Shown one piece after another: positions 30,501 through 64,000 of a DNA stretch of 64,000 bases. The position numbers were made by a program, and so were the translations under genes. The notes under the pieces were generated by a model. It saw only the letters and a program-made list of their open reading frames with translations. It did not search any database and was not told the DNA's origin. Origin of the DNA: Macrostomum hystrix (lineage: Eukaryota; Animalia; Platyhelminthes). Every line of letters starts with the position of its first letter. The stretch's first letter is position 1. Location: assembly GCA_950097015.1 (NCBI GenBank), contig CATNEN010000041.1, positions 3,646,386-3,710,385 on the forward strand, written 5' to 3'.

Positions 30501-31900
30501 GTGGGAGAGGACGGCGTGTGGCTATGGCTGACTGACGAAGGCAAACAAGCCAGAAACCGGTCTCGGTCTGCCAGCGCGAGGTTCGTTCCCCACTTTTAGT
30601 GTGCTACAACAGCGCAGCGTACCTAATATTGCGGTCTGGGTACCGTTGAATGCGGTGGCATTGCGCTTCTGCGTGGACGGGGTGAAATCTTTGTTAATTG
30701 GGTCAGCTTCTACCAGTTGGTCCCTTACTTTGGTGCCCATAGCACTGGCATTCGCGCCGGAGTCAAGATAGGAAATTATGCTGCTCTCTCCTACACTTAA
30801 CTGGACAAAACAACTCGACTCAGTTTGGCACCCAGGATTACTGGTCGCCACACTTGACATTGGCTGGCAACTCACTAACATCAAAAGCGCGATCACTGGG
30901 GCGTCCGGGGTCAGTTTCTCGGCGGAATCTAACTCGAAGGCCAACTAGCTGACGATTAGGGACTCTAGGTCGCAGTTCAGGGTCAGGCCGGGAAGAGTGC
31001 ACGAATACAATGTCCCCCAGGAGACTAGAGCGGATGAACCCGTGAGAGAGATACCACTGAGTGATCACACCGGATTCGACGGGCGGCCCCTCTCTGATTA
31101 GGTGGGCCTCTGATCTGCTGGCTACCCCTACCTGGGGGCAGAGGATGTGGGCACTCCGAGACTAGGTGATCCAACTGGCCGCAGCGATGGCATGCGCGCG
31201 AAGGCTTGCTCGTAGGTTGTGCTCGTCCGTAGCCATAATGATGGGGCTGGAAGTTTGTGAGGCCCCCCGGAGCGGGAACTTGGTGTGAGACCTCACCCCC
31301 CTGCCCTCCGCGGCGATGGGAAGACGGATGCCCGGCTTGGATACCTGACTCCGGTTGGGTGAGTGGAGGCTTAAAGCTCTGGGCTGGTCCCTCTCTTGCC
31401 TGAAACACTTGGGGCTCCTGTTTTGACGGAGACTGCAACGACTTTTGAGACTGGGAGAGCTTTTCTTCTAACTCCCTCACCCGTGCTTCTAATTCAGCGG
31501 TCCTATCGGGCGCTAGGGCGCGAACATTCGCATGACGGGTTCAACAACTGACGGACTCCTGCTATCTCTCGGGCCTTCCTACACAGGTCCTCCGCTGTCA
31601 GCATTGCGTTTTCCCTGCTCTGCAAGATCAACTTCTCGGCTAGCTAGTTGTCAAGCTTCTGTCAAGGTTACGATCAACTAGACAATGACAGAAACGGGCT
31701 CGAACTAGGGGCTCGAACTCCTGGCGGGTCATCTGAGCAGTATGGGCAAGGCTCACAAGTCGGTCAAAATAATCTTCGACTGGCTCTGCTACTTCTGGGT
31801 GGCTCCTACGAGGTACGAGCTCTAGATAGCTTTTGTCTTTCTCGGAGACATCTGTGTACCTATCAGCTAAGTCGTTGAGGGCCACCTCGATTTCGGCTTC
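27566..31900 (-). mobile_element. Degenerate Gypsy element 3 (gag-PR-RT-RH-partial IN-GPY/F)
   Basis: Zinc knuckle CHRCGQLDHLVSEC (31025-31480 ORF); protease YLDSGA and LLGLDF; RT SLDLTSAYWQV...YLDD (28719-29405); GPY motif WLGPYRV (27566-28105); integrase core largely deleted. LTRs not identified. Confidence 0.85.
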
Positions 31901-41949: not shown

Positions 41950-42600
41950 TGCACGCGTGTGCAGTACATTAGCGAAAGTGAGCATACTTCGTAAGACATT
42001 CAAAACACAATACATTGATGCTCTATCCAAGTGCGCATGGGCCAGAGCATTAAAAATGAATCCGCTGCGGAAGTCAAGTCAGCCTTTGAGAGCGAAGCTT
42101 AAATCACTCGCACAGCTCCTTAACTCATCAGGTTCCACAAGTGCTGTATGGACAGGGGGTATTTTAGCTTTTCCAACAGCGAACAAAAGGCGGCTGTCAT
42201 AGAGCGATGGAAGCGGATCTTAAAGAATAAGATGTGGCGATATGTCACACAAGTTCGAATGGGTAGAGGATTGAACTGAGTCGAATTAAGTCTTGAAGAT
42301 TGCGTAAGACAACCCTAACCCTAAACTCAGCTCCATCTCTCTGCTACTCGCCGCTCATTTGCTCCCAGCCTAACCAAATACCCTACCTAGAACCCTCGCC
42401 TCCGCTCCCAAAGGCCCTTTTACTACTTCCGCGCTCTGCCATTCGCTGCACTGATTTGCTACTTTTTTAATGTATTCCAATTTATTATAAATGCAATATC
42501 AGTTCAATTGTATATTTCCCTTTATTCAGCTCTGAGGAAGATCTAATCTGGTCGAAACGCGTCGAGAAATTAAAACCAACTAGCCTGATCTAAAAATTGT
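41950..42600 (+). mobile_element. Decayed Penelope-like element 3' end / pLTR
   Basis: Weak GIY-YIG C-terminal-like residues (SLAQLLNSSG...RRL / ...RGLN*), then ACCCTAACCCTAA (42312-42324), a C-rich and AT-rich spacer and a hammerhead motif. Confidence 0.5.
42528..42566 (+). ncRNA. Degenerate minimal type I hammerhead ribozyme
   Basis: CTGAGGA-a-GATC(taatct)GGTC-GAAA-CGCGT-C-GAG; stem I weakened, consistent with loss of one C from GCTCCTGA. Confidence 0.7.
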
Positions 42601-44249
42601 TTTTTTTTACAATGTATGTTTTGAGCTCGATCCACAGTAGTCGACTGCGGAACTCACAAATACTACCTAAACCTAGCCCTGTGACATTATAAGTCCCACA
42701 AATTGAGCAAAAAGTAGGAGCATAATCTAAATTAAAACCCATAAAAAATAATATTACATAACTAAAATTAAAATCAGAGTTCTGAATCGTTGCGGTTGCA
42801 ATACGACAATAACATTAGAACAAAAATAAATGTAAACAGCATAAAAAACTTGCAGATAAGTATCGCCGTCTTAATAACAAGTGATTTTGATAACTATTTA
42901 AGTTAGCACACAGGCTTCTAAAGTGGCTTTAGTAATATAATTGTTTCTGTTTTTAGTTTTCGGACGAATTTAATTTGTGTTTTAACTTCCAGGTATTATA
43001 TTACGCGTCCAGTAAATGCATTTTATAAGAGCTTGTTACTGCGCAACCAAGATTTGCGAAAAAAGTATCAATTTGATGGTGTAACTCCTTGTCTTTACCT
43101 TTTAATTTTTTTAGTTGAAATATAAATACATCAGGTTTATGAATACAGAAAGTTTTGTGTTTTTAGACAGATGGAATGCTAGATATGTTTTAGTTCATTT
43201 TTATAACATCAAACATTTTATTTTGTTATTGAAAAAACAATAACGTTCACTGATAGTTAAATTATTAGTGCCTTTCTTTTCCAGCTATTTTGTGAGATTT
43301 TTAGTCTCCTTCAAACGTCATGTTAAGTAGATAACGTTTTTAATGCTTTAAAATGTTTTATGTTAGTTTTCTAATAGTAACAAATGTAAACTTTACAGTT
43401 GAACATTAAATCAAAAGTTTAATGTGTATAAAAAGTGGTCTAAATGAGACGTTCTCGATTTCTCGATAAAATAACAACAATTTTAATTTAGCAAATAATA
43501 GAAAATAGTATTATATTTTGTTTAGAGAACAACAATAATATTTTTCATAGCATAGCCCATGCAAAGTAGTTTTTGTATCTTGAACTAGCTTGTTAAATTA
43601 AAAAACATGGTTGTAATGGTTTCAAATGTTTTTACAGTAGTTATTAGTATTTAGCAGTTGTAGTCTCTCTTTAAAGTGTACAATTTACATATATATATTT
43701 ATAGTAGATAGACTGCTTTAATGTTCTTATGCTTGGCAGAAGTCAATTTCTTAATGAGATACATAATTTGTATGATAGATTTTTTTGTCCTTGAATAGTA
43801 TTATATTTAAGCAAAAAATACTTATCTAGTAAGCATGTGCTAAGTTATGATGATACCATACAACTGCCTACACATAGGTACCTACAGCCTTGATTTTTAA
43901 ACACTTCAAATTTATATTTTTTTGCTAATTTATTCGACGAGAAACATTTGCAGAAGCAAAGTTAGCAAAATTAAGCGTACTTGAATTGGTTGGCATTGAT
44001 GACTAAGATTAACCACAGCCAACCAAAAGACGTAAAACAAAGATGGAAGCAGCTGGTGGAAGGTGGGAGAGGCAGCGAAACGTAAGCAGCAAGGAGGAGA
44101 AAGCGATCCCGCCTCTGAAACAAGGAAGGAGGAAGAGGGAAAGAAGAGAGCAAAATCACCAGGCTTTAAAAAGAAGTTAGATACCAGAAGTCAGCAAGCG
44201 GCAGCAGCGACTCACTGTGCGGTGAAGCGCTATCCGAGAAATAACGAAG

Positions 44250-47452: not shown

Positions 47453-50400
47453 ATGTTTCGGTGCTTCGAAAAGATCTTGACGTTCATTGGGCTGAAGAGA
47501 CCTGTATACGATGAATTCAGAACAATATATGTCAACCATAAACAACTTCGATCAAAAGACCCGTTCAATGAGGAGAAGTACCCATCAAACCGGGTCATAA
47601 CTTCCCGGTACACTTTGGTTAATTTTCTAGTAAAAAATTTACTGGAGCAGTTCAGCAGAGTCGCAAACTTTTACTTCCTGATTGTAGCAGTCGTGCAGTT
47701 AGGAATCGATTCTCCAGTTAGTCCAGCTTCTTCGTTTATGCCATTGGTCTTTGTTCTCGGTGTCACAGCGATCAAGCAGGCATATGAGGACATCCTGCGA
47801 CACAGAGCAGATGAAAAAGTCAACAATACGATTTATAAAGTCATCCGAGAGGACTCACTTGCTGATGTGAAGGCCTTTGAGATTCGTGTTGGAGATGTCG
47901 TCAAAGTTCACAAAGACGAAAGCTTTCCATGTGACCTCATTTTGTTGACATCGTCTGAAGATTCAGGTGAGAGTTTTCTTTATTAACTTATTCGTTTTTT
48001 AAAGTACACTGACTGACAAAAGTTGTTCTTTGAGGGCTAACCCAAAGGTCTTTGTGTGCAAGAGGTTAATTTAAAACGTAAAGCTTGCTGTATTTGCGAG
48101 CATATACTAGGGAGTATTTTTTTCTAACCCTGACGAATATGAGCTCAATGCACTCTGATTAATGAATCAAAGTTCTTTACCCTTTTACAGTTAGTTAAAA
48201 GCTGAAAAGTATCGCAGTAAGGTACTAGTATTGTAGTTGAATTTAGCTTGTTGAAACTAGGTTCGGCCAGAAGGGGCCGGCTGACGGTATATTTTATAGA
48301 GTTAATCGTTAGAAGGACACAGCTTTGGGTGAAAATTTGTTAAAATTGGGGGTGGACTTAAGCCACAGGGTTCTCGTTTAAAAGAGTAAACGCGCGCTTA
48401 AACGATGTACGCGCATTGTACATATTCAAAGTACGTCTATGAGTTGGAGGCATGCACATGCCCAAACAACCAATTGAACAGGGAAAGTGGGGGTTAGAAA
48501 ATACGACATGAAAAAAATGATTTTGCACTTTTCCGCCACAAGTATGGAACACTAGTCTAGTTTTTATAGACCAATAATCATTCCAGTCTATTCTAGTTGT
48601 AAGACCGTGGGTTACGAGTAAGTTGTAGTGAATAACAAAATGTGAGCAGACCTCACACGCTCACGCCAATATATGTATTGCCAAAGTTGGGGTGGGCGTA
48701 AACACCCTATAAGCACGCACACGCTGCAGCGTCAACCCCCACTCCAAACAAGCCGCACGGCACATCTATGTGCACGCACACCAACAAGCCAGACTACATA
48801 GTGAACTAGTCTCAGTAAAAAGCACTAGATACAGTCCCACCGGCAAGTATAGCTTTATACAGTCCGAAAATACAATCGAAAAAATGTGCGCATATTATAA
48901 TAAAAAGGCACTGTTTTATACGAGCTATCAGCAACCTCATTATATTATATATAATAAAATTGAATCAGAGGTACGTTATATATTCTTAATAAGAAAATTC
49001 GGGTTATGCATAAATTAGAGAATTGCGTTATTAAAAAAATTCAAAAAATTTCAGGCGAATGCAGTATTACGACAGCTAATCTGGATGGTGAGACAAACTT
49101 AAAGGCTGTGTACTCAGTGGAGCCAACAAAGCCAATGAAGTCCGTCCAGACAATCTGCGCCAGCTTGCGCGCTCGAATCTCATGTGAGCAGCCAACTGCA
49201 GATCTCTACAAGTTTAAAGGTAACATTCTTGTCAGGCACAGATCCAGACCGTACGATAAGGTTCCACTTAGTTTGAAGAATTTGCTTCTGCGAGGAGCCG
49301 TTTTACGCAACACTGATTGGGTCTTTGGTGTGGCTGTATACACTGGACAGGAGACAAAAATGCAGTTAAATTCGCAGCATGGAAGGTCAAAGAAATCTGT
49401 GATTGAGAGAAGACTCGACAAGTTTTTGCTATGCTTTATGATAACCCTACTAATAGAGTCTATATTTTGCACCTCAATGAAATGGGGATATGCTACGCTG
49501 AATAAATCTGTTACGGAGGCTTGGTACGTTTCGCCTGAACCAGCCACGCCCTGGCGGGTAGTCCAAGATCTACTTGGCTTTATCGTGCTATTTAACTACT
49601 TGATTCCTATCTCTCTGTATGTTACCATTGAGCTTCAGAAATTCATCGGCTCCATTTTCTTTGAGTTAGACTTGGACATGTACTTTGAAGATCTTGAAAC
49701 AGGGGAGAAACTCAGAGCAAAGGCAAACACATCCGATCTTAATGAAGAGCTTGGCCAGGTTGAGTACCTTTTCTCTGATAAGACTGGAACTCTCACTGAG
49801 AATAAAATGACATTTAGAAAATGTTCGATTGGAAGACGAACATTTTGCGACCAGGATGGAGAATTGTGGGAGACAGAAGGTCCCGGTGGTAATCAACTGA
49901 GCCGCCAGAGAATGCTGGGTGAGCAAGAACTTCATTTCTTCATAGTTTTGGCCCTCTGCCACACAGTTCGAGTTGAGCGACCGAAGTCTTTTAGCAGGGA
50001 TTCAGCTGGCAAATTGCAAAAAGAGGATCATTCATACTCGGCATCGGAAGCTGAAAGCTACATGTACCAAGCCAGTTCACCAGATGAAAAGGCCTTTGCA
50101 GAAGCAGCAAGAAAGTACGGAGTGATCTTCCATGGTACGGAGGCCGGTGTTAGTATTCTTTCTGTTATGGGAGTCAACGGCAAGCAGATTATTCAGCGTT
50201 ACCGTGTCCTTCATGTGCTTGAGTTTGACTCCGATCGAAAATGCATGTCAGTCATATTACAGAGATCTAATGGAACCTACTGGTTACTGACTAAAGGAGC
50301 TGAGAGCTCTATGTTAGATAAGTGCTCATCCGGTGATCGGGACTCAATTGTGCAATATAGTGGCGAATTCGCTGTAGAAGGTCTTCGGGTACTGGTCATC

Positions 50401-52716
50401 GCACACAGGGAACTTTCAGAAGAGGAATATCGTCAAATGAATTCTCTGTTGCTCACTGCAGAGCAAGACGTGGCCCACAGGGAAGAAAAAATGATTGAGG
50501 CTTGCAAGTAAGTATTAACAAATCTTTTTGAACTCTTAGCCTAGCTTTCATACCCGCTTTTATATTACCACCCGCTTATATTATTTTATTATTATCACCC
50601 TTTCAAAAGCAACAGAGCCAGAAACCCGTATTTTTATCACAAAATCTCTCATTCAGGAAAGTAAAAGAATGCCATGAAGAACTTCAATACAGAGTTGTTT
50701 AAAAAACTGATCTATGACATAGGGACATAACCGAAGAAACAAATGAGTAAATAAATGAACAAAATAATGAGCGAATGCAAGGATTAATGAGTAAACGAAA
50801 AATAAAATATTTTATTAGAGGCAGCTTTTCGAGCATTCCATATCTCACGATCGTGTACGCGGTTGACCGCTACATCTAACTGCCGGGCCGATTGAACAAA
50901 ATATTCTCGTCGCTCAAAAGCTTCAATAATCGGAGCTCTAACATTATCCACTAGGACCACTGTATGTCAGAATTTGCGACCCCCAGCTGCACCTTTCTGA
51001 GGATTTAATTTTTTGTTACTTAGGGTGCAGTTGCACATTTTTCGCAGGACGATTATTTTGTGAAAGCGCCCTCAGGTAACCAGACATAGTTACAGTGTTA
51101 GGGTTTAAAACCTGATTATTCAGCTAATGCAACTTAAAAAACTTTAATGCGCTAACAGGTCGCTGAATTTTAAGTTTATATTCTTAGATTCTATTAGTAC
51201 GCAAGTGCTCGTAGTTAGCAAGATTCGTCCTGTTGTGCTCTAACTGTCTTCTGTATATAACATAAAATGCATTAAACTTAATGGCCTGCTGAATTTTCAC
51301 AATTGGTTTTATTTGGTATTATCACTTTTTAGGGCCGTGGAACGTGACCTTGAAGCTCTAGGATTGACGGCTGTTGAGGATGAACTGCAGGCAGGTGTCT
51401 CCGAGACAATAACTGCGTTGCGTCATGCGGGCATTCAGGTTTGGGTTCTCACTGGAGACAAACGAGAGACAGCAGAGAATATTAGTTTGTCAGCAGGACA
51501 CTTTACTGTGTCTATGCAACGCATTAGAATCATTGATCAACAGTCCGCAGATGAATGCCGTAGGAGTTTACTGCAGGGCCTGGAGGAAATTGCGGCCGCT
51601 GGTTTCCCACTATCAGCTCAATACTGTGCAGTGGTCGACGGCCAGTCACTGCAGTTTCTGGTAGCCGATGAGCACACTGACTTAAAGGAATTGTTCCTTG
51701 ATCTTTGTCGCAAAACATCTGCCGTATTGTGCTGCCGGTGCACACCGCTTCAGAAAGCGAAAATTGTCGCAATGGTTAGGAAAGGAATTCAGCCAGAGCC
51801 CATAACCTGCGCTATCGGTGACGGCGCAAACGATGTATCTATGATTCGAGAGGCCCATGTTGGCCTTGGAATATTTGGTAAAGAGGGTCGTGCGGCCGCT
51901 CTAAATTCAGACTATTGCTTTGCAAAGTTTAGGTTTGCCCGTAATGCTCTTCTGTTCCATGGTCACTTGTACTATGTCCGCCTGGCAACTCTTGTTTTAT
52001 TTTTCTTTTACAAGAATGTAGCCTTCATAACTGCTGAGTTGTACTATGCATTCTTCTCGGCGTTCAGCGCACAGTCAGTGTATGACACAATTTTTCTAAC
52101 AATATACAACATGACAATGACAGCTCTGCCTGTGTTGATCTACGGTTTATTTGAGCAGCATCTGCCACGAAAACGGCTGGAGAATGAACCAAATCTGTAT
52201 AAAGACATTGCACAGAACAGAATGCTCTGGTGGAGAGAACTAATTAAATGGTGCTCCATAGGATTGTGGCATTCAATCTGCTGCTTCTTTGGTGTTTTTG
52301 CCGTATTCTCAGTCAATGATTGGGTTGGAACAAATGGCTTCGTCTTTGATGTTTATGCCTTCGGCACCGTAGTCATTTATTGCGTGCTTGCGTGCGTCAC
52401 AGCACGTATTCTGATAGTTACGTTTAGTTTCCACGTGCCTGTCCTAGTTGGCTTTCTGGTTACTACCTTAGGTTTTGTTATCATCATGTGTATTAACAGT
52501 GTTTCGACGGCGACTTTGTTATCCAACCATCTGACTTTTTTGTGGGCCTATTTCGACATTAGCCTGCAACCAGTATCTTGGCTTCTACTGCTATCTATCA
52601 CAGTGCTGGCTATGACGCCAGACTTTATTGTGCGCTGCGTGCAGGACATTCGTACTGACAGGCTAACTAAAAGGCGAATGACTTCCGAGCTACCGGTGAG
52701 AGTTATAAAGCATTAA
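47453..52716 (+). CDS. ATP11: P4-type ATPase phospholipid flippase (ATP11-like), about 1116 aa, 3 exons
   Basis: Exons 47453-47966, 49055-50507, 51333-52716 with GT-AG and matching phases; motifs LDGETNLK, PISLYVTIE, SDKTGTLT, YQASSPDE, IGDGANDVSMI, C-terminal TM helices. Subfamily assignment by motif memory only. Confidence 0.92.
48598..48798. mobile_element. Solo LTR in flippase intron 1
   Basis: TGTAAG...CTACA, 201 bp, flanked by a perfect 4-bp TSD TAGT (48594-48597 and 48799-48802); shares GGGGTGGGCGTA with the Gypsy 1 LTR. Confidence 0.8.
51057..51112 (+). repeat. 56-bp dispersed repeat, copy 2 (flippase intron 2)
   Basis: Identical to 47241-47296. Confidence 0.9.
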
Positions 52717-54592: not shown

Positions 54593-55540
54593 CATTTTAC
54601 CGACTGTACGTGCGGCGGTGGCAAGTTGCGCATATCCGTGCCTATGTAGAATCACCTATATTTTGCGAATCAGATTAAACGTCCGCCCTCGTGATTTATT
54701 AAAATACCTCCCTCAAAATGCGTGTGTACTCTCATGGATCATATACGCTCGTGTGAAGCTTAGGAATTTTTTGTCTATTGTCACAACCAACAAAGGAATA
54801 GAAAATGGAGTATAGCTCAATAAAAAAACTTGATTATTGTCTCATAAAAAATCTTGCAATCACAAAGTTTAATCCTGGAGGGCAAAACATATATGGTTTA
54901 TAAATATTTTTCTGGATCCAATTTTTTGCTACAACAATTCCGTCACCTTACTTCTGTGCTTCACTGCTTTATTGCCTAAAGTTGCTCTATCTTCAAGTAA
55001 ATTAAAATGAATCAAAATCTATAAAACGTCTTTTATTTTACTTAACAATACTTTGTCTTTACACGTTTCTCGCTATTTAATCCATGATATGGTAATGCTT
55101 CTTTTTTTAGTCGCAGATTTTTATTCCTAAATAAAATCTCAAACTGAACTCTTAAGCTTAAGCTGAGACTTGCTTTTCTCAATCTGTTTTTTTTTCTTAT
55201 TATGAAGCAAACCTTTTGTAGGTGGCATAGAGCTGCACTGTACCCCCGAGGAGTTGTATTAAAAATTACACAACCCCAATTTTAAATGGCGAAATACATT
55301 AGAAGTACCGTATAGGAAAATGGGTTAGGAGTTAGGAACAGATCCGGTCTGCCGACTCCTTGCTAGATGACAAATGACGGAGGCTAAGAGGACAAAAGTA
55401 AATTTAGGTAGCTTTATGTAACTTTAGGTAGGGTTAGGGTTAGGACTTAGGAGGATTCCGAGGCCGGCAGGCAATCGACAGACGAGAATTAGTAATTTAA
55501 TTTAGTAAGCAAGACGGGGAACAATATAATTAGGGTAAAT

Positions 55541-55555
55541 GCTCGACGCGTTTCG
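55541..55555 (-). ncRNA. Half hammerhead (CGAAACGCGTCGAGC) truncated by telomeric repeats
   Basis: Plus strand GCTCGACGCGTTTCG is followed directly by AGGTTAGGGTTAGGGTTAGG; the CUGANGA half is missing. Confidence 0.75.
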
Positions 55556-55657
55556 AGGTTAGGGTTAGGGTTAGGAGTTAGGAACCGATCCGGTTCCGGT
55601 CGACTGCTTAATAAAAAAAGTCTAAGAGGAGACAGGCGGAATTTTTGGTTTTAAAAT

Positions 55658-55695
55658 GCTCGACGCGTTTCGGCGGGTTTGCCTTTATCAAGAGC
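55658..55695 (-). ncRNA. Hammerhead ribozyme motif with mutated core
   Basis: Minus: GCTC-TTGATAA-a-GGC(aaaccc)GCC-GAAA-CGCGT-C-GAGC; two core changes versus CUGANGA. Confidence 0.75.
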
Positions 55696-55982
55696 TAGTT
55701 AAGTGAAGAGTCTAAGGTGTGGCGGGTATATTTGTATATATAATAATAAATTTATATTAAAAAGATGGGCGCGAGGGTCGAGAGCGAATAAAAAGAGGGT
55801 TGGGGTTACAATTAACAAATGGGAGTTGAGCAGGGGTAAAAAATAAACAAATGGGAGAAAAAATGAGGGTCTGCATAGGGTCTGGGTGGGGTCTGAGTGA
55901 AAAAAGGTTAGGGTTAGGAGTTAGGAACAGATCCGATCTGACGAAAAGGAGTCAAGCTAAAGAGGATTCTAGGATTTAAGTT

Positions 55983-56020
55983 GCTCGAGCGCTTTCGGCG
56001 GGATTGCCTTCTTCAGGAGC
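55983..56020 (-). ncRNA. Intact minimal type I hammerhead ribozyme
   Basis: Minus: GCTC-CTGAAGA-a-GGC(aatccc)GCC-GAAA-GCGCT-C-GAGC; palindromic stem III AGCGCT. Confidence 0.88.
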
Positions 56021-56428
56021 TTAGATTGAGTGAAGAGTGGATAGTGGACAGTATATTTGTATATATAATAATAAATTAACATTAAAAAGATGGGCGCAAG
56101 GGTCGGGAGCGAATGAAAAGAGGGTAGGGGTTACAATTAACAAATGGGAGTTGAGCATGGGTAAAAAAATGTCAAATGGGAGAAAAATTGAGGGTCCGCA
56201 TAGGGTTTGAGTAAAAGATTAGGACAAATGGGAGAAAAAGTGAGGGTCTGGGTGGGGTCTAAGTGGAAAAAGGAAGGGTCGGTATTGGATTGGGCAAGGG
56301 TGGGCCGGGAGGTTAGGACTTAGGAGAATTCCGAGGCCGGCAGGCAATCAGCAGACGAGAATTAAGTGTAAATAATTTAATTTAAATCGATAAAGTAAGC
56401 AAGACGGGGAACAAAATAAATAGGGTAT

Positions 56429-56466
56429 GCTCGACGCGTTTCGATCGTCTGATCTTCTTCAGGAGC
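56429..56466 (-). ncRNA. Intact minimal type I hammerhead ribozyme
   Basis: Minus: GCTC-CTGAAGA-a-GATC(agac)GATC-GAAA-CGCGT-C-GAGC; GUC cleavage triplet. Confidence 0.9.
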
Positions 56467-56948
56467 GAGTGTATTATAAAACGATGTAAATATTGTAAAT
56501 ATTGTAGATAATGTAAATATTGGCAGTGGAAAGTGAGTTAAAAATCAATTGCATTGGGTTACATAAGAAAAAAATGGGCTTACTCGGGTGCAATAATAAC
56601 GTCCTAAAAATTAAGTGTTGTCTAAATTTTAAAAGTATGAAATATCATTTAACGCTAATTTTACTACTAATGAAATAAAGGTAATAAATTGTGGGTAGAA
56701 AGTAAAAATTAAAAATTAGGAAAGACATTTTTCAATACATATCGGGGAGTAGAAAAATAGGTAAAGAGTAAAACAATGAAGCAGATTGAAGATAGGAGGG
56801 GAAGAGAAAAATTAGAGGATAAAAATGCAGAAGGCTAGGGTTAGGACGTAGGAGAATTCCGAGGCCGGCAGGCAAGAATTTAATGTAAATAATATAACTT
56901 AAATCAATAAAGAAAGCAAGACGGGGAACAAAAAATATAAATATGGTG

Positions 56949-56988
56949 GCTCGACGCGTTTCGGGAATATTTTCCCTTCTTCAGGAGC
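56949..56988 (-). ncRNA. Intact minimal type I hammerhead ribozyme
   Basis: Minus: GCTC-CTGAAGA-a-GGGAA(aata)TTCCC-GAAA-CGCGT-C-GAGC. Confidence 0.9.
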
Positions 56989-57648
56989 GATGTAAAACGA
57001 TGTTTATTGTAAATATTGTAAATATTGTATATAAGTAGTATAAAAAAATATGAAACAAACGCGTTTTCCTTATGGAGAAATACATAGGTAGTACCGCATA
57101 GGAAATGCCTATACATTTAACTCAAAACGCACCAAAAATTTTCTAAGTCCTAACTCGCACGAGGAATTTTTCTAAGTCAAAGTCTATCTCTCTCTCTTCT
57201 CTCTCTCTCTATCTCTGTCCTTAGCATGTTGTTAAAAAAATTCCAAGTCCAAACTAACTGCTCATTTAGTGTGCAGATAAGAATTCAGAGACACGCTAAC
57301 AATCTGAAATGTTGATATGTTGAATCTGATATGTTGAATCAGTTTTATTTAAAGCTACCACTAGCGAGAGTTGCTGCACACAGACTTAATGACATTGTCA
57401 CACTAACTTGAAAAAATATTCTACCACAAATTAATGTTTCTGTCTTATTCATCAGATTCGGTACGAAGCTTTTTGTTGAAACAGAAATTTTTATTTAATT
57501 CCACACGCGGTAACATATGACACATGCTAAAATATTGTCGAAACAACTAGCCATAAAATAATTCAAGACTTGCTTTTGAAGCATCGCACCATTTTATGCA
57601 TCTCTTAATGCACTTACAGTATACTTAAACCGTTAACATGACCAACAG

Positions 57649-58218
57649 TCATAGATAATGAATTAAAATTCGTAAAACAAAAGATCGCAGTTTAACATAG
57701 GCTTTTCGGAAAGAATCACTTCGCGAGACATTGCGCTTAGAAATACTCTTTAGAAAGACGTGCAGAGTTTTTCGAATAGTCAATTTATAAAAGACATAAA
57801 ATACAGCCCAAAAGCCACAGCTACCGCTTCGAGGGTCTTGGACAGCAAAGCGAGTATAACTCCAATTTCTTGCCCCACCACATTGTATTCCTAACCAACG
57901 TGCCACAGATGCAATCGGATGGAGTCCAAGTGAATCGAAATATTCTCCATATCTTTTACCCTGTCGACCTGCATAGGACGTATTTCCATGCACCCAAACA
58001 CAAACCCAATGTTTTCCAGGTAGATTAGAAGTGTCTGTGTTTACAATAAAAAAATAATCCTTTTCATTAAGTGGAAGATGCTTAATACTTAATACAAAAT
58101 CTTGGGGGAATACTCCTAAGAAGACAGCATGCGAAAAATAAGCGCACAGTTTTGTAGCAATAGACCGAAGAAATCGATCTGTAACACCGTTTTGTAGAAT
58201 AGAATCAATTACTTCCAT
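57649..58218 (-). CDS. Polinton/Maverick adenain-like cysteine protease (189 aa)
   Basis: VNTD...GKHW, EYFDSLG, VQDPRSGSCG: His/Asp/Gln/Cys motifs present. Confidence 0.88.
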   Translation of the reverse strand: MEVIDSILQNGVTDRFLRSIATKLCAYFSHAVFLGVFPQDFVLSIKHLPLNEKDYFFIVNTDTSNLPGKHWVCVWVHGNTSYAGRQGKRYGEYFDSLGLHPIASVARWLGIQCGGARNWSYTRFAVQDPRSGSCGFWAVFYVFYKLTIRKTLHVFLKSISKRNVSRSDSFRKAYVKLRSFVLRILIHYL

Positions 58219-59532
58219 GCAGTTCCAGGAACAACGTCACGAAGCTCAGTTAGTTGCAATTGCTTGTCAAAAATTCCTCCAAATATGACGTTGTACACAG
58301 TGCTAGTTGCAGAACTGAATCGCAGCTCAATTTTCACGTTTCCTTCCTTATACAGTTGAACACCATGACCGATACCTGGTTCACTACCGAGACTAAAGGC
58401 AAAAATAGAGTATCCATTCGCATATTCACCCATAGTGAAACCAATGTCACGTCCTTGCAGATAAAGACCCAGTTGCTGTAGAAGAAAAGTATACTCTGTC
58501 ACACAATCACCTTCAAAGTTGGTTTGCAGCGGCCGGCATGGCATTGACTCTCCATTTACAAACACACCGATGCTGTTAACGTTAGCATGCTCAAAGTTGA
58601 ATGGATTCGTGTCCATGCTTCCATTGAATGCTCGGTTATTTACAAAAGCTAATAATAAAAGCCGTGGAACTCCACTTGGGAATAAATTCTCGTGCGTGTG
58701 GCTGGATGATCCGCGAGGAATAGTAAATGTTCCCATGCTTAGACTCCGGTGGGGATATAGAGCATTGTGGCTTTTCAGACCATGTGCATGAGCACTAGTA
58801 ACGCTAGGTGATGGTTGGACAAGTCGCAGTCGTAATTCTGCTCGCAAGAACCTAATTTCATAATCTTTAAGTTGCACATCGCTTCCTATTGATGCACCAC
58901 TCAAAACAAATTTGCTTTTTGCTGGTGTTAATTTGATACGCATTGGTGTCTTTGAAAGTAGATATCGCGGTTGACGAAAAAGATCTAAAAATAGAGGACC
59001 AGACACTGTACAATGACGATTTTCAGCAATCAACGATCGCCTCTTCGTTCGTCCTTCGTTATCGTTTGTTGAATTCATTTTACCAGCAGTATCTTTGTAG
59101 AAACCCCAAGGTACCAGACCTGACTTCTGTGCTGTGTGTCCATACTCAAGAAGTGTTAGAAGCATTGCCTTGTAGGGATACATGAAGCTTCCACCTTCAA
59201 CAACAGTGTCTCCAATAGTAAATTGCACATCTTCAAACAATGTTGCGATTGCTAAGTTGTTTACACACACATAGTTTTTTTGCAGCATCAATTGCGTTAC
59301 CTTCTCCGTCGCTGACGCGGAAGCTAACTGTTAGCACAGTATCATGCAGATCTAAATACAGATCTCCAGGCGGTACAATCTCAAACTCGATTGGAGAACC
59401 TTTTGTTATCCCATGTTGTGGTTGAATGTCTGTGTAGCGACTTTCTAAAACACTGAATTGAACAGGTGTCTGGTCAAAGAGAGAGAGTTCGCTTTTCAAT
59501 GCAGCAATGTCGGGACCGAGAAGTTGATTCAT
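58209..59532 (-). CDS. Polinton/Maverick major capsid protein, split by one frameshift near 59260-59281
   Basis: N-part MNQLL...ELSLF...PIEFEI...YLDLHDT joins C-part VNN...LF...YPYKAMLLTLL...GPL..DLF.Q..YL...NPFNF. The break lies at an A7 / TG-repeat tract. Confidence 0.8.
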
Positions 59533-59533
59533 G

Positions 59534-59968
59534 TTATTTTCCGAATAAACTAAAAAGCTTCTTGCTTGCAGCGGAGTTTTGCTTTCCTCTTCGTTTCTTG
59601 ACTCTGTAGGCACTTCGTCCTCCTCGTCGTCTTGTTACACCTCGTTTTTTTCCTTTACGTCTTAAGCTTATAGGTCTAGCTGCTCTCTTTCGTCGCTTGT
59701 TGGTTAAGGTAGGCGTGTCAAACATGTCTTCTTCAGAAGTTGAGTTCGCGTGCCGCTTGCGCCCCATACCGATTTTGCTGGCAGCGCTTTTAAAATAATC
59801 TAGGCTGCGATCCAGAAGATCCTTTTTAGCATTACGTATTACAGGAAATAGCAGTCTTTCAGCCAAGTTTGATAGGAATCCGTATCCTTCGTAGACGGGG
59901 ATTGCAGATGCTCCTCGTCCACCGATTGAATTATTTGGACCGGAATAGAAGGCGAATATCGGATCCAT
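59534..59968 (-). CDS. Polinton pVII-like basic core protein (144 aa)
   Basis: GG.G...YEGYGFLSNLAERLLFPV N-terminal motif and Arg/Lys-rich C-terminus; lies between integrase and capsid. Confidence 0.65.
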   Translation of the reverse strand: MDPIFAFYSGPNNSIGGRGASAIPVYEGYGFLSNLAERLLFPVIRNAKKDLLDRSLDYFKSAASKIGMGRKRHANSTSEEDMFDTPTLTNKRRKRAARPISLRRKGKKRGVTRRRGGRSAYRVKKRRGKQNSAASKKLFSLFGK

Positions 59969-60001
59969 GACTTATTATTAAGCGATATCAGTTTTTCAGC
60001 T

Positions 60002-61153
60002 TTACTTATACACACGAGCAAACAGTCTAGCAGTCTTTGCATCGAGATCTTTTTCACTCAGCCACTGACTCCGTGAAATTGGCATGTCTTTCCACTTTAC
60101 TAAATACAAACGATTACCCTTCTGCGATCGATCTGTTTCGAGAACCTTTTCTATATCGACAGGTTCCTCATCCACTTCATTCACGAGTAGAAGTTCATCC
60201 TCGTTGAATCTTCCTTCTAGCAAATCGAAATTATCTTCTGAATCAGCTAATTCATACATTGGCGGGTCAGACAGGTGAACATGATGAACACGAAACTTTG
60301 AATTGCTCCAAATTGTTGTGTAACCCTTTTCAAAAATTCCTCGTCGTCGGAGAATTCGCACCCAATCACCAACTTTGAATTTTGGTTTTGAAGTGCGCAC
60401 TTGTGTAAACATTTTGTCCCATAGAATTCCTTGAAGATGTTCATCATTCTCTACTCGTTTCGGTGTTTCTCCACTTAAAGCTCGATGTGGACTTGCGTTG
60501 AAATTTTTCTCTAACTGTGGCAATATGTCAAACCAACGTGCTAGATTCTTAGCTCGAAAGTATCGTTGCAGGCGTTCTTTTAGAGATCGAATAAATCTTT
60601 CTGCCAGGCTAGCCTTGTAGGAACTTTGAGAAACGAAAAACCTCACTCCCTCCTGTTTTAGCATTTGTCGCGTTGATTTTCCAAGAAACTCCATGCCTGC
60701 GTCGCCTTGTAAATAAACTGGTTTGAAGCCACTTCGAAAAATATCTTGCAGCACTTGCAGCACTTCGCTAGGTTTCTTTGTCTTTAATGGTCTAAGTCGA
60801 ATGCTTCGCGTGAAGCAGTCAATTAGAACTAGTATGAAACGATAACCTCGATTTTCAGTTTTATACTGCGGCAGGTCGGCTAAATCGATTTGAAACTGGA
60901 ATCGTGCCACGGGTGGTACACTAATTTTTGGTGTCAGAAATTTTTTAGACAACTTTTGAAATAAATGGTGCTCTTTTGTTGATCGTACCCAACTTTGTAC
61001 TTCCTTTCGTGCGTCTTCATATTTTATCTGTGGAAATTCTTTGCGCACAGCACGAACAAGTTCAGATCTATTACCTGAGAACGAAGTTGGATTTTCCAAG
61101 TTGAAGAAAGAATCAGATAGAAACTGAGCAATACTTTTACGTATTCCTTGCAT
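60002..61153 (-). CDS. Polinton/Maverick retroviral-like integrase with C-terminal chromodomain (383 aa)
   Basis: FFNLENPTSFSG, QIDLADL, YRFILVLIDCFTR, LQGDAGMEF, KASLAERFIRSLKE (33 residues between second D and E); chromodomain IEKVL...YLVKWKD...SQW. Confidence 0.9.
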   Translation of the reverse strand: MQGIRKSIAQFLSDSFFNLENPTSFSGNRSELVRAVRKEFPQIKYEDARKEVQSWVRSTKEHHLFQKLSKKFLTPKISVPPVARFQFQIDLADLPQYKTENRGYRFILVLIDCFTRSIRLRPLKTKKPSEVLQVLQDIFRSGFKPVYLQGDAGMEFLGKSTRQMLKQEGVRFFVSQSSYKASLAERFIRSLKERLQRYFRAKNLARWFDILPQLEKNFNASPHRALSGETPKRVENDEHLQGILWDKMFTQVRTSKPKFKVGDWVRILRRRGIFEKGYTTIWSNSKFRVHHVHLSDPPMYELADSEDNFDLLEGRFNEDELLLVNEVDEEPVDIEKVLETDRSQKGNRLYLVKWKDMPISRSQWLSEKDLDAKTARLFARVYK

Positions 61154-61179
61154 TGATTGTATTGCAGCAAATGAAGCTT

Positions 61180-61404
61180 GGGTTAGGGTTAGGGTTAGGG
61201 TTAGGGTTAGGGTTAGGGTTAGGGTTAGGGTTAGGGTTAGGGTTAGGGTTAGGGTTAGGGTTAGGGTTAGGGTTAGGGTTAGGGTTAGGGTTAGGGTTAG
61301 GGTTAGGGTTAGGGTTAGGGTTAGGGTTAGGGTTAGGGTTAGGGTTAGGGTTAGGGTTAGGGTTAGGGTTAGGGTTAGGGTTAGGGTTAGGGTTAGGGTT
61401 AGGG

Positions 61405-61445
<41 letters not shown>

Positions 61446-64000
61446 GGTTAGGGTTAGGGTTAGGGTTAGGGTTAGGGTTAGGGTTAGGGTTAGGGTTAGG
61501 GTTAGGGTTAGGGTTAGGGTTAGGGTTAGGGTTAGGGTTAGGGTTAGGGTTAGGGTTAGGGTTAGGGTTAGGGTTAGGGTTAGGGTTAGGGTTAGGGTTA
61601 GGGTTAGGGTTAGGGTTAGGGTTAGGGTTAGGGTTAGGGTTAGGGTTAGGGTTAGGGTTAGGGTTAGGGTTAGGGTTAGGGTTAGGGTTAGGGTTAGGGT
61701 TAGGGTTAGGGTTAGGGTTAGGGTTAGGGTTAGGGTTAGGGTTAGGGTTAGGGTTAGGGTTAGGGTTAGGGTTAGGGTTAGGGTTAGGGTTAGGGTTAGG
61801 GTTAGGGTTAGGGTTAGGGTTAGGGTTAGGGTTAGGGTTAGGGTTAGGGTTAGGGTTAGGGTTAGGGTTAGGGTTAGGGTTAGGGTTAGGGTTAGGGTTA
61901 GGGTTAGGGTTAGGGTTAGGGTTAGGGTTAGGGTTAGGGTTAGGGTTAGGGTTAGGGTTAGGGTTAGGGTTAGGGTTAGGGTTAGGGTTAGGGTTAGGGT
62001 TAGGGTTAGGGTTAGGGTTAGGGTTAGGGTTAGGGTTAGGGTTAGGGTTAGGGTTAGGGTTAGGGTTAGGGTTAGGGTTAGGGTTAGGGTTAGGGTTAGG
62101 GTTAGGGTTAGGGTTAGGGTTAGGGTTAGGGTTAGGGTTAGGGTTAGGGTTAGGGTTAGGGTTAGGGTTAGGGTTAGGGTTAGGGTTAGGGTTAGGGTTA
62201 GGGTTAGGGTTAGGGTTAGGGTTAGGGTTAGGGTTAGGGTTAGGGTTAGGGTTAGGGTTAGGGTTAGGGTTAGGGTTAGGGTTAGGGTTAGGGTTAGGGT
62301 TAGGGTTAGGGTTAGGGTTAGGGTTAGGGTTAGGGTTAGGGTTAGGGTTAGGGTTAGGGTTAGGGTTAGGGTTAGGGTTAGGGTTAGGGTTAGGGTTAGG
62401 GTTAGGGTTAGGGTTAGGGTTAGGGTTAGGGTTAGGGTTAGGGTTAGGGTTAGGGTTAGGGTTAGGGTTAGGGTTAGGGTTAGGGTTAGGGTTAGGGTTA
62501 GGGTTAGGGTTAGGGTTAGGGTTAGGGTTAGGGTTAGGGTTAGGGTTAGGGTTAGGGTTAGGGTTAGGGTTAGGGTTAGGGTTAGGGTTAGGGTTAGGGT
62601 TAGGGTTAGGGTTAGGGTTAGGGTTAGGGTTAGGGTTAGGGTTAGGGTTAGGGTTAGGGTTAGGGTTAGGGTTAGGGTTAGGGTTAGGGTTAGGGTTAGG
62701 GTTAGGGTTAGGGTTAGGGTTAGGGTTAGGGTTAGGGTTAGGGTTAGGGTTAGGGTTAGGGTTAGGGTTAGGGTTAGGGTTAGGGTTAGGGTTAGGGTTA
62801 GGGTTAGGGTTAGGGTTAGGGTTAGGGTTAGGGTTAGGGTTAGGGTTAGGGTTAGGGTTAGGTTAGGGTTAGGGTTAGGGTTAGGGTTAGGGTTAGGGTT
62901 AGGGTTAGGGTTAGGGTTAGGGTTAGGGTTAGGGTTAGGGTTAGGGTTAGGGTTAGGGTTAGGGTTAGGGTTAGGGTTAGGGTTAGGGTTAGGGTTAGGG
63001 TTAGGGTTAGGGTTAGGGTTAGGGTTAGGGTTAGGGTTAGGGTTAGGGTTAGGGTTAGGGTTAGGGTTAGGGTTAGGGTTAGGGTTAGGGTTAGGGTTAG
63101 GGTTAGGGTTAGGGTTAGGGTTAGGGTTAGGGTTAGGGTTAGGGTTAGGGTTAGGGTTAGGGTTAGGGTTAGGGTTAGGGTTAGGGTTAGGGTTAGGGTT
63201 AGGGTTAGGGTTAGGGTTAGGGTTAGGGTTAGGGTTAGGGTTAGGGTTAGGGTTAGGGTTAGGGTTAGGGTTAGGGTTAGGGTTAGGGTTAGGGTTAGGG
63301 TTAGGGTTAGGGTTAGGGTTAGGGTTAGGGTTAGGGTTAGGGTTAGGGTTAGGGTTAGGGTTAGGGTTAGGGTTAGGGTTAGGGTTAGGGTTAGGGTTAG
63401 GGTTAGGGTTAGGGTTAGGGTTAGGGTTAGGGTTAGGGTTAGGGTTAGGGTTAGGGTTAGGTTAGGGTTAGGGTTAGGGTTAGGGTTAGGGTTAGGGTTA
63501 GGGTTAGGGTTAGGGTTAGGGTTAGGGTTAGGGTTAGGGTTAGGGTTAGGGTTAGGGTTAGGGTTAGGGTTAGGGTTAGGGTTAGGGTTAGGGTTAGGGT
63601 TAGGGTTAGGGTTAGGGTTAGGGTTAGGGTTAGGGTTAGGGTTAGGGTTAGGGTTAGGGTTAGGGTTAGGGTTAGGGTTAGGGTTAGGGTTAGGGTTAGG
63701 GTTAGGGTTAGGGTTAGGGTTAGGGTTAGGGTTAGGGTTAGGGTTAGGGTTAGGGTTAGGGTTAGGGTTAGGGTTAGGGTTAGGGTTAGGGTTAGGGTTA
63801 GGGTTAGGGTTAGGGTTAGGGTTAGGGTTAGGGTTAGGGTTAGGGTTAGGGTTAGGGTTAGGGTTAGGGTTAGGGTTAGGGTTAGGGTTAGGGTTAGGGT
63901 TAGGGTTAGGGTTAGGGTTAGGGTTAGGGTTAGGGTTAGGGTTAGGGTTAGGGTTAGGGTTAGGGTTAGGGTTAGGGTTAGGGTTAGGGTTAGGGTTAGG
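61180..64000 (+). repeat. Terminal telomere (TTAGGG)n, about 470 repeats, runs to the window end
   Basis: Pure TTAGGG with only three variants: TTTAGGG near 61423, TTAGG near 62858 and 63457. Confidence 0.99.

What the first reader, a model, noticed from the sequence alone, without database searches (positions are those of the whole stretch)
55322..57010. Tandem telomere-seeded hammerhead units: a record of repeated terminal retrotransposition
Seen: six units in two subtypes (TTAGGAGTTAGGAAC at about 55322/55557/55906; TTAGGAC(T/G)TAGGAG at about 55431/56311/56837). Each begins on + with 1-3 telomere-like repeats, has a minus-strand hammerhead 60-105 nt further on (absent in the short first unit), and is cut at a variable point where the next unit starts. 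Known: Athena PLEs and Terminons of bdelloid rotifers lack endonuclease, point away from the telomere, and carry reverse-complement telomeric repeats and hammerheads at their 3' ends. Inference: RNAs ending in (CCCUAA)n annealed to the G-overhang and were reverse-transcribed onto this end in successive rounds, alongside telomerase, in a TTAGGG animal. No RT is encoded in the window, so it would act in trans.
Basis: partly seen in the sequence, partly recalled or inferred. Interest (0 to 1): 0.85.

Follow-up and report, generated by a model that had tools for sequence, protein, structure and literature searches.

The report
Hammerhead retroelement stack beside a telomere
Six short non-coding retroelement copies, each starting on telomere repeats and most carrying a Penelope-type hammerhead ribozyme, lie stacked 4 kb inside a real telomere of a flatworm-like animal; they look like RNA copies added to a chromosome end, as in rotifer Athena elements, but I found no endonuclease-free reverse transcriptase in the genome.

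Summary
Window 55322-57033 contains six head-to-tail units of two families, in the order A1, B1, A2, A3, B2, B3. Each begins on the + strand with TTAGGG-like repeats and is cut off where the next begins.

- **Hammerheads (minus strand):** intact in A3, B2 and B3, core-mutated in A2, half-present in B1 and absent in A1.
- **Position:** the window is the last 64 kb of contig C41. It ends in at least 2.8 kb of (TTAGGG)n with the same polarity as the units.
- **Genome-wide:** the telomere-repeat-plus-hammerhead signature occurs only at four contig ends (C41, C7, C9, C14) and one internal site (C3). All but one subtelomeric locus point toward the end.
- **Independent events:** copies 90-99% identical on different ends have different junctions on both sides.

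Repeated terminal reverse transcription is therefore well supported. The units are non-coding, and B has a fixed 5' end, so they need a reverse transcriptase in trans. Every Penelope-like RT I could detect in this genome is fused to a GIY-YIG endonuclease, so no Athena-like RT turned up. No RNA data exist, so transcription is untested.

The present telomere sits on a broken Polinton, not on a unit. The scan reported a similar stack on another contig of this genome (s1-262235).

The parts
55322..55430 (-). Unit A1. It starts with GGGTTAGGAGTTAGGAAC joined directly to non-telomeric DNA. Only its first ~34-42 nt match A2/A3. It has no hammerhead. Its distal 30 nt carry TTTAGGTAG-like repeats and may be a separate tiny unit.
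55431..55556 (-). Unit B1, 126 nt, 5'-truncated inside the ribozyme. Only the 3' half of the hammerhead remains (55541-55555).
55557..55905 (-). Unit A2. It begins with three telomere repeats. Its hammerhead at 55658-55695 has a mutated core (CUUGAUAA). It is 98.7% identical to a copy at C9:32.7 kb that has different junctions.
55906..56310 (-). Unit A3, with an intact hammerhead at 55983-56020. It is 5'-truncated relative to A copies of at least 610 nt on C7 and C3.
56311..56836 (-). Unit B2, full length at about 526 nt, with an intact hammerhead at 56429-56466. It ends at the family's fixed 5' end (...GCAGAAGGCTAG).
56837..57033 (-). Unit B3, with an intact hammerhead at 56949-56988 and helix II GGGAA/UUCCC. 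It is interrupted at 57033 by the Polinton terminus.
57034..61179 (-). Fragment of a Polinton/Maverick-like DNA element, with an rve plus chromodomain integrase ORF at 60002-61153. It is 99.5% identical to a full copy on C7 that also encodes a protein-primed PolB and a dUTPase. Here it is broken off by the telomere.
61183..64000 (+). Terminal (TTAGGG)n tract running to the end of contig C41. This is the present telomere, with the G strand on +.
42314..42690 (+). A related hammerhead unit of another family, in inverted orientation (hammerhead 42532-42563 on +). It is bounded by TTAGG-like repeats at one end and by TTAGGGTTAGGGTT at the other.
55253..55319 (+). Base of the stack: a ~67-nt stretch resembling the first ~70 nt of the Polinton terminus. 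The last 34 nt are 85% identical to 57072-57105. It is cut off where A1 begins.

Best explanation
A and B are two families of short, non-coding, Penelope-derived retroelements. Their RNA is the minus strand in this window.

**RNA layout (5' to 3').** An AT-rich body comes first, then a dimer-type type-I hammerhead, then a 60-105-nt tail. The RNA ends in imperfect reverse-complement telomere repeats: ...GUUCCUAACUCCUAACC in A and ...CCUCCUAAGUCCUAACC in B.

**Addition step (inferred).** That 3' end pairs with the single-stranded TTAGGG overhang, or with a few bases at a broken end. A reverse transcriptase supplied in trans extends the chromosome's 3' end along the RNA. It often stops early, which gives the 5' truncations. 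Telomerase or the next element RNA then extends the new end. Repeated rounds built the stack A1-B1-A2-A3-B2-B3, oldest innermost.

**Later events at this end.** A Polinton integrated at the distal edge of the stack. The chromosome then broke inside it and telomerase healed the break at 61183.

**Shown:** the anatomy, the polarity, the restriction to chromosome ends, the independent junctions and the non-coding nature of the units.

**Inferred:** RNA priming on the overhang and the identity of the RT. My preferred candidate is one of the intact endonuclease-bearing PLEs of this genome, whose hammerheads share the same CUGAAGA / GAAACGCGUC core.

The hammerhead is probably inherited PLE processing equipment, not the attachment device. 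Cleavage would separate the body from the telomere-pairing tail. The most recently active A subfamily has a dead core, and the C and D families have no ribozyme.
For: 1. **True chromosome end with matching polarity.** (TTAGGG)n runs from 61183 to the contig end, and contig C41 ends where the window ends.
2. **Genome-wide restriction to ends.**
   - BLAST with A3 and B2 and a pattern census (TTAGG, 50-111 nt, then CTCGASSSSTTTCG) gave 29 overlapping matches against about 2 in the reversed-pattern control.
   - The matches fall only on C41, on C7:13.47-13.50 Mb of a 13.506-Mb contig (+), on C9:32.9 and 52.5 kb (-), on C14:7.8 kb (-), and on one internal cluster at C3:5.55 Mb.
   - BLAST found one more internal copy, a truncated B at C10:2.25 Mb.
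3. **A unit between telomere tracts.** On C14 a B unit lies between (TTAGGG)19 and further telomere-like sequence, just under a 5-kb telomere.
4. **Independent integrations.** In each pair below, the junctions differ on both sides:
   - A2 and the C9 copy, 98.7% identical.
   - A3 and the C7 34k copy, 90%.
   - B2 and the C7 17k copy, 90.5%.
   - B3 and the C7 42.5k copy, 92-94%.

   Each window unit is closer to a copy on another end than to its neighbours, which are 75-82% identical.
5. **Priming by pairing.** The C7 17k B copy starts at the element's internal ACCCUAA directly after TTAGGG repeats. Basal units join non-telomeric DNA with only GG(G)TTAGG.
6. **Non-autonomous.** The units hold no ORFs. 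B ends at the same 5' base in four copies with three different neighbours, and other B copies are 29-316 nt long.
7. **Real, conserved ribozyme.**
   - Helix II covaries at 4 of 5 pairs.
   - Helix III switches ACGCGU to AGCGCU and stays palindromic.
   - 86% of cells pair, against 22-31% when the partners are slid.
   - The predicted dimer is about 6.7 kcal/mol better than two monomers.
8. **PLE RTs available in trans.** There are 59 profile hits, including open frames of 750, 775 and 712 aa. Hammerheads with the same core lie about 200 nt 3' of PLE ORFs.
9. **Matches a published mechanism.** This is the attachment mode described for Athena, Coprina and Terminons (PMC8557442, PMC6431247).
Against: - No RT is linked to the units, and no endonuclease-free PLE RT was found, so the enzyme is unidentified.
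- No RNA evidence exists for any unit.
- Two subtelomeric copies are inverted (window 42.5 kb and C7:13,469.4 kb), and two loci are internal (C3, C10).
- The hammerhead lies 60-105 nt from the repeats. In Terminons the repeats follow the ribozyme immediately.
- Only 4 of 84 contig ends are known to carry units, and I could not survey the other ends.
- Endonuclease-mediated targeting of telomere repeats cannot be excluded from sequence alone.
Confidence: 0.7

Rival explanations
1. Endonuclease-dependent, site-specific insertion into telomere repeats. An EN+ Penelope-like element nicks (TTAGGG)n and inserts A/B RNAs by target-primed reverse transcription, as the TRAS and SART LINEs do in silkworm. 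The chromosome end itself is not used as primer.
For: - Only EN+ PLE RTs are detectable in this genome.
- The most distal unit on C14 is a 97% copy of the 3' end of a GIY-YIG-encoding ORF (C39:105307-106230) that itself ends in CTAACCCTAACCC.
- Internal copies on C3 and C10 also start with telomere repeats.
Against: - Basal units (A1 in the window, C7 16.7k, C7 42.5k) join unique DNA with no telomere tract to target.
- No target-site duplications were seen at any junction.
- The number of repeats before a unit varies from 0 to 19.
- One copy is primed at an internal ACCCUAA.
- Units stack without telomere sequence on their distal side.
Confidence: 0.13
2. The RT is telomerase itself. It occasionally switches from its own template RNA to A or B RNAs whose 3' ends mimic the template region, so no transposon RT is involved.
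For: - The genome uses TTAGGG repeats and has a weak Telomerase_RBD hit at C3:1247082 (28.3 bits, cut-off 25).
- Units alternate with telomerase-type repeats.
- No dedicated RT was found.
Against: - From general knowledge, telomerase is poorly processive on non-cognate templates, and copying 500-600 nt would be unusual.
- The hammerhead and overall layout point to PLE ancestry.
- Intact PLE RTs are present.
Confidence: 0.08
3. Retrozyme-style amplification. Hammerhead cleavage of array transcripts yields monomers that circularise, and rolling-circle reverse transcription of the circles generates the tandem units.
For: - Type-I dimer hammerheads in tandem units are the hallmark of animal non-LTR retrozymes (PMC7229834; bioRxiv 10.64898/2026.07.22.740005).
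- This genome holds hundreds of short hammerhead units: 346 pattern matches against 37 in the control.
Against: - Neighbouring units belong to different families, have different lengths and are only 75-82% identical, so they are not products of one circle.
- Unit boundaries fall at telomere repeats, not at the ribozyme cleavage site.
- A2 has a dead ribozyme core yet has a 98.7% twin elsewhere.
Confidence: 0.05
4. No retrotransposition at all. The array is a patchwork made by subtelomeric recombination and segmental duplication, and the telomere repeats are relics of old fusions.
For: - Subtelomeres of C7 and C9 share satellite blocks.
- The Polinton copy is shared at 99.5% between C41 and C7.
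Against: - Every unit begins precisely with telomere-type repeats at the same element position and ends at a variable one.
- Related copies never share junctions.
- B and C units adjacent on two ends differ in divergence, 82% against 97%.
Confidence: 0.04

Closest known systems
[quoted passage not shown] 2017, as summarised in PMC8557442 and PMC6431247)
   Same: - Subtelomeric position, with the 3' end toward the centromere.
[quoted passage not shown]
- Copies 5'-truncated by telomere repeats.
- Head-to-tail mixed arrays.
   Different: - The units here are 110-610 nt and non-coding; Athena and Terminons are 6-40 kb and encode an RT.
- No EN-less PLE RT was found in the genome.
- The repeat is TTAGGG, not TGTGGG-type.
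- The hammerhead is 60-105 nt from the repeats, not adjacent to them.
- The host is a flatworm-like animal, whereas Athena is described as rotifer-specific (PMC8557442).
Coprina and other EN-minus PLEs of fungi, plants and protists
   Same: Telomere association through reverse-complement (NNNCCC)n tails plus a hammerhead, in hosts that use TTAGGG or related repeats.
   Different: - Those elements encode their own RT.
- Their hammerheads are stable as monomers (PMC4209133), whereas these are the minimal dimer type typical of metazoan PLEs.
Animal non-LTR retrozymes and hammerhead SINE-like repeats (for example schistosome Sm-alpha; PMC7229834; bioRxiv 10.64898/2026.07.22.740005)
   Same: - Short non-coding units with a type-I hammerhead that has a palindromic helix III.
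- Presumed dependence on PLE RTs.
- This genome has hundreds of such dispersed units.
   Different: - Retrozymes are dispersed or form uniform tandem arrays, and they lack telomere-complementary tails.
- These units are restricted to chromosome ends and form mixed, truncated stacks.
Telomere-specific non-LTR retrotransposons (HeT-A/TART/TAHRE of Drosophila; TRAS/SART of Bombyx; PMC5537684)
   Same: Oriented head-to-tail, 5'-truncated arrays at chromosome ends, coexisting with telomerase in the case of TRAS and SART.
   Different: A different retroelement class. Those are LINE-type, coding, with poly(A) tails or endonuclease targeting and no hammerhead.

Membership tests
EN-deficient PLEs (Athena / Coprina / Terminon) | Element encodes a PLE-type reverse transcriptase without a GIY-YIG endonuclease | tested here: not met
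   The units have no ORFs. A genome-wide PLE RT search with one protein and with a 14-sequence profile gave 47 and 59 hits. None lies in the four unit-bearing subtelomeres. All sizeable hits have a GIY-YIG domain just downstream; four short RT fragments (C7:6607722, C38:29605453, C33:1433203, C1:23931682/14242395) have none listed. The profile was built from EN+ PLEs only, so a very divergent Athena-like RT could have been missed.
EN-deficient PLEs (Athena / Coprina / Terminon) | Reverse-complement telomere repeats at the element's 3' end | tested here: met
   Every A and B copy starts on the G strand with (TTAGGG)0-19 followed by family-specific variant repeats.
EN-deficient PLEs (Athena / Coprina / Terminon) | Hammerhead ribozyme motif next to the 3' telomere-complement repeats | tested here: met
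   The hammerhead lies 60-105 nt upstream of the repeats on the element strand. The spacing is larger than the 'immediately downstream' arrangement described for Terminons (PMC6431247).
EN-deficient PLEs (Athena / Coprina / Terminon) | Location at chromosome ends, 3' end proximal, 5'-truncated, in head-to-tail arrays | tested here: met
   Eight of nine signature-bearing loci lie within 53 kb of contig ends. All but one of those eight are in the predicted polarity (one further inverted fragment on C7 lay outside the census). Truncation points are variable.
Type I hammerhead ribozyme | Conserved core CUGANGA ... GAAA ... UH, with helix I open and helices II and III closed | tested here: met
   A3, B2, B3 and six copies on other contigs have the full core. 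A2-type copies have CUUGAUAA.
Type I hammerhead ribozyme | Helices supported by compensatory changes | tested here: met
   Helix II shows changes on both sides at 4 of 5 pairs. Helix III switches CG to GC. The covariation score is 0.324 against a shuffled mean of 0.116, reached by 0 of 500 shuffles.
Type I hammerhead ribozyme | Scores against the curated Rfam hammerhead models | tested here: not met
   No hammerhead family matched at the gathering threshold or at E up to 10. This is expected for minimal ribozymes with a 2-bp helix III.
Type I hammerhead ribozyme | Self-cleavage activity | not testable with these tools
   Folding only: the dimer with a 6-bp intermolecular helix III is favoured.
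Animal non-LTR retrozymes | Uniform tandem monomers, or dispersed copies, that yield circular RNA | tested here: not met
   Neighbouring units differ in family, in length and by 18-25% in sequence. Circular RNA could not be tested because no RNA runs exist.
Telomere-specific LINEs (TRAS/SART, HeT-A/TART) | LINE-type ORFs and a poly(A) or LINE-type 3' end | tested here: not met
   No ORFs and no poly(A). The units have a hammerhead and a PLE-type layout instead.

The most novel reading that the evidence does not exclude
This animal has no endonuclease-free PLE. Instead it has a guild of at least five RT-less RNA families (A, B, C, the GIY-YIG-derived D, and E on C9) that extend chromosome ends by borrowing an RT, either an EN+ PLE RT or telomerase.

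Full-length members carry telomere-like sequence at both ends:
- The 3' tail primes on the G overhang.
- The 5' end encodes GGCTAG in B and GGTTTA in C. The finished cDNA therefore again ends in a near-telomeric hexamer that telomerase or the next RNA can use.

This would be a self-renewing add-on to telomerase-based end maintenance. The order of families at different ends (A, then B, then C, then D) would record genome-wide waves of activity.
Probability: 0.25. Interest if true: 0.8.

Novelty: new variant of a known kind. Interest (0 to 1): 0.6.

Why it matters
Attachment of Penelope-like retroelements to chromosome ends is the main living model for how telomerase may have arisen from a retroelement. 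Among animals it has been documented only in bdelloid rotifers.

- These stacks show the same signature in a second animal lineage, one that has ordinary TTAGGG telomeres.
- Here the attached elements are short and non-coding, and no endonuclease-free RT is evident.
- If that holds, end-attachment depends mainly on the RNA's 3' tail, and ordinary EN+ PLE RTs (or telomerase) can be recruited for it.
- The dead ribozyme core in the youngest A copies, and the ribozyme-free C and D units, give a direct handle on whether the hammerhead is needed at all.
- The stacks also provide datable layers for reconstructing the breakage and healing history of individual chromosome ends.

Tried and rejected
- **Rfam:** no hammerhead hit at gathering or permissive thresholds, so I used patterns, folding and covariation instead.
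- **Pfam GIY-YIG on the genome:** only two weak hits. They nevertheless led to both PLE endonuclease types.
- **Pfam RVT_1 on the genome:** about 2000 candidates, so uninformative.
- **Dispersed hammerhead loci:** five 10-kb loci held host genes and no RT. Those hammerheads belong to short non-autonomous units.
- **Longest A copies (C3, C7):** I looked for an RT ORF upstream and found none; A runs into satellite or unique DNA.
no hit near the GIY-YIG locus on C39.
- **Terminon-like reading of 57034-61179:** rejected. It is a Polinton with a protein-primed PolB in its full C7 copy.
- **Sequence allowance:** I could not read the intact PLE ORFs (C8:2.4947-2.4969 Mb, C37:3.2067-3.2089 Mb), the RT+EN relative of the C39 element (C11:4.732 Mb), C9:41.6 and 52.5 kb, or the other contig ends. 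Only their coordinates are known.
- **Read laying:** DNA-type contigs only, so there is no evidence on expression either way.
Full report
**What is there.** Window 55322-57033 holds six head-to-tail units of two families.
- A units carry TTAGGAGTTAGGAAC at 55325, 55571 and 55914.
- B units carry TTAGGAC(T/G)TAGGAG at 55440, 56313 and 56841.
- Both motifs are absent from shuffled sequence.

Read on the + strand, each unit starts with 1-3 TTAGGG-type repeats and then family-specific variant repeats. A tail follows, then the reverse complement of a hammerhead, then an AT-rich or G-rich body that stops where the next unit starts. The order is A1, B1, A2, A3, B2, B3.

**The hammerheads are real but uneven.** On the minus strand the motif reads GCUC-CUGAAGA-(helix II)-GAAACGCGUC|GAGC.
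- A3, B2 and B3 have a full core. A2 has CUUGAUAA, B1 is cut inside the ribozyme, and A1 has none.
- Rfam scores nothing.
- Across 14 copies from four contigs, helix II changes on both sides at 4 of 5 pairs (GAUC/GAUC, GGGAA/UUCCC, GGCUG/CAGCC, GGC/GCC).
- Helix III alternates between ACGCGU and AGCGCU, and both are palindromes.
- 86% of cells pair, against 22-31% for slid partners.
- Co-folding predicts a dimer with a 6-bp intermolecular helix III, about 6.7 kcal/mol better than two monomers.

This is the minimal dimer-type hammerhead described for metazoan PLEs (PMC4209133).

**Context: a true chromosome end.** The window is G000:C41:3646386-3710385, and the contig ends at 3710385. From 61183 to the end it is (TTAGGG)n on the + strand. 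The units therefore have the polarity expected if the G strand was extended on an RNA template.

The last host gene is a P4-ATPase at 49006-52716. Its best matches are flatworm proteins at 38-45% identity. The host is therefore an animal, probably a flatworm.

**Genome-wide distribution.** BLAST with A3 and B2 and a family-independent pattern (TTAGG, 50-111 nt, then the 3' half of the hammerhead) were used. The pattern gave 29 overlapping matches, against about 2 in the control. The signature occurs only at these places:
- the C41 end;
- three loci at C7:13.47-13.50 Mb of a 13,505,968-bp contig (+ strand);
- C9 at 32.9 and 52.5 kb (- strand);
- C14 at 7.8 kb (- strand);
- an internal cluster at C3:5.55 Mb.

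A truncated B copy also lies at C10:2.25 Mb. One subtelomeric copy from the census is inverted (window 42.5 kb). BLAST and the hammerhead scan found a second inverted A-like fragment at C7:13,469.4 kb. About 2% of the genome lies within 55 kb of a contig end, so four ends plus one internal site is far from random.

**Evidence that these are separate additions, not duplications.**
- Each window unit is closer to a copy on another end than to its neighbours, which are 75-82% identical.
- The closest pairs are A2-C9 at 98.7%, A3-C7 at 90%, B2-C7 at 90.5% and B3-C7 at 92-94%.
- In every one of those pairs the proximal junction and the distal end differ.
- On C14 a B unit follows (TTAGGG)19 and lies under a 5-kb telomere.
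- On C9 an A unit is followed by a 29-nt B stub.
- On C7 one B copy starts at the element's internal ACCCUAA directly after TTAGGG repeats, as expected for priming by base-pairing.
- Basal units (A1 here; C7 16.7k and 42.5k) join unique DNA with only GG(G)TTAGG. This suggests healing of non-telomeric breaks.

**The units are non-autonomous.**
- They have no ORFs.
- B ends at the same 5' base (...GCAGAAGGCTAG) in four copies with three different distal neighbours. Other B copies are 29-316 nt.
- A reaches at least 610 nt on C7 and C3 without any upstream ORF.
- DNA searches with A and B hit no ORF-bearing element.

**Which RT?** The genome has about 346 PLE-type hammerheads, against 37 in the control, and many PLE coding remnants.
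- A PLE thumb-plus-GIY-YIG ORF (L037) has 134 matches.
- A PLE RT query and a 14-sequence RT profile give 47 and 59 hits, with open frames up to 750-775 aa.
- By coordinates, every sizeable RT hit is followed by one of two GIY-YIG types.
- No RT hit lies in the four unit-bearing subtelomeres.
- I therefore found no Athena- or Coprina-like EN-less RT. The caveat is that the profile was built from EN+ elements.
- Hammerheads about 200 nt 3' of EN+ PLE ORFs share the CUGAAGA / GAAACGCGUC core with A and B.
- A weak Telomerase_RBD hit exists at C3:1247082.

**A coding relative with a telomere tail.** The most distal unit on C14 (6873-7007) is a 97% copy of the last 135 nt of a GIY-YIG ORF at C39:105307-106230. 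That ORF has CX2-5CxxC and CCHH motifs, and its reading frame ends in CTAACCCTAACCCTTACCCC. Protein-coding PLE-type elements with telomere-complementary 3' ends therefore exist here too. A relative at C11:4.732 Mb has an RT fragment upstream of the endonuclease.

**What lies between the stack and the telomere.** Window 57034-61179 is 99.5% identical to C7:13,472,679-13,476,822.
- The C7 copy continues through a dUTPase and a 1249-aa protein-primed PolB, and it has an inverted terminus 16.5 kb away.
- It is therefore a Polinton/Maverick, not a retro-added or Terminon-like unit.
- In C7 it sits between a B unit and an A unit.
- In the window it interrupts B3, and it is itself broken at 61179-61183, where telomerase repeats begin.

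**Role of the hammerhead (inference).** Cleavage at GUC|GAGC would separate the body from the telomere-pairing tail, so copies that include the body must come from uncleaved RNA. The youngest A subfamily has a dead core (A2, C9 and the C3 11.6k copy; the C3 19k copy also has a mutated helix III), and the C and D units lack a ribozyme. The ribozyme therefore looks like inherited PLE equipment, kept by selection on structure, not like the attachment device.

**Reads.** Only DNA-type contigs hold the stretch.
- Contigs of one run reproduce the left flank/A1/B1 junctions and the A3/B2 junction exactly.
- Contigs of a 2020 study show junctions not present in this assembly.
- No RNA run is on record.

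**Verdict.** It matches the published behaviour of Athena, Coprina and Terminons (PMC8557442, PMC6431247). The differences are the host phylum, the short non-coding elements and the apparent absence of an EN-less RT. The scan had already reported a similar stack on another contig of this genome (s1-262235).

Noticed in passing
window 57034-61179; L019:7679-10000, L028 and L020:1-4166 (C7:13,472,679-13,489,166): A recently active Polinton/Maverick (99.5% identity between C41 and C7). It encodes an rve plus chromodomain integrase, a dUTPase and a 1249-aa protein-primed PolB with an Endonuclease VII domain. It has inserted twice into hammerhead-unit stacks. The C41 copy is broken and capped by the telomere.
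   Followed up: partly
window 2201-2442 (-) and 30366-30608 (+): A 243-bp dispersed hammerhead unit with core CTGACGAAGGCAAACAAGCCAGAAACCGGTC, 96% identical between the two window copies. The same ribozyme string makes up about two thirds of the matches listed in the genome-wide hammerhead pattern search, so this looks like an abundant SINE- or retrozyme-like family.
   Followed up: partly
window 2860-7032: A DIRS-like retroelement. Its 909-aa ORF (3075-5804, -) has RT, RNase H and tyrosine-recombinase domains, and the element is bounded by ~240-bp direct repeats (2860-3096 and 6795-7032, 96% identical).
   Followed up: no
window 55253-55319: The DNA onto which the first unit (A1) was added resembles the first ~70 nt of the Polinton terminus (34 nt at 85% identity to 57072-57105). 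An earlier break may also have been inside a Polinton end.
   Followed up: no
L022:7031-7170 (C14) and L022:6873-7007: A run of 16-nt variant telomere repeats, (TTAGGGTTAGGGTTAT)n, forms the tail of the GIY-YIG-derived unit directly under the 5-kb telomere of C14.
   Followed up: partly
L029:8535-10000 plus L021 (C7); L022:1-1871 (C14); L023:1-207 (C9): In three contigs the 5-6.5-kb telomere tract is not terminal. Between 0.2 and 2.4 kb of non-telomeric sequence lies beyond it at the extreme contig end. This could be an assembly artefact or something real.
   Followed up: no
Read laying on window 55250-57700, runs X5-X7: Contigs from a 2020 study show junctions absent from this assembly. In one, an A unit cut at about 56104 is joined to a B start. 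In another, the C3 flank ACAAGTTTGCAAA is followed by a 15-nt A stub and then a B unit. This hints at strain-level turnover of the stacks.
   Followed up: no
L029:3362-3537 (C7) and L022:7171-7352 (C14): A ribozyme-free unit family 'C' (~170 nt, 97% identical between the two ends). It has its own variant telomere tail and follows full-length B units that are only 82% identical to each other.
   Followed up: partly
C9:52490-52590 (-), coordinates only: A further telomere-seeded hammerhead family ('E', beginning TTAGGGTTAGGGTTAGGACTAGAGTAGAATCC) in the C9 left subtelomere. I could not fetch the sequence.
   Followed up: no
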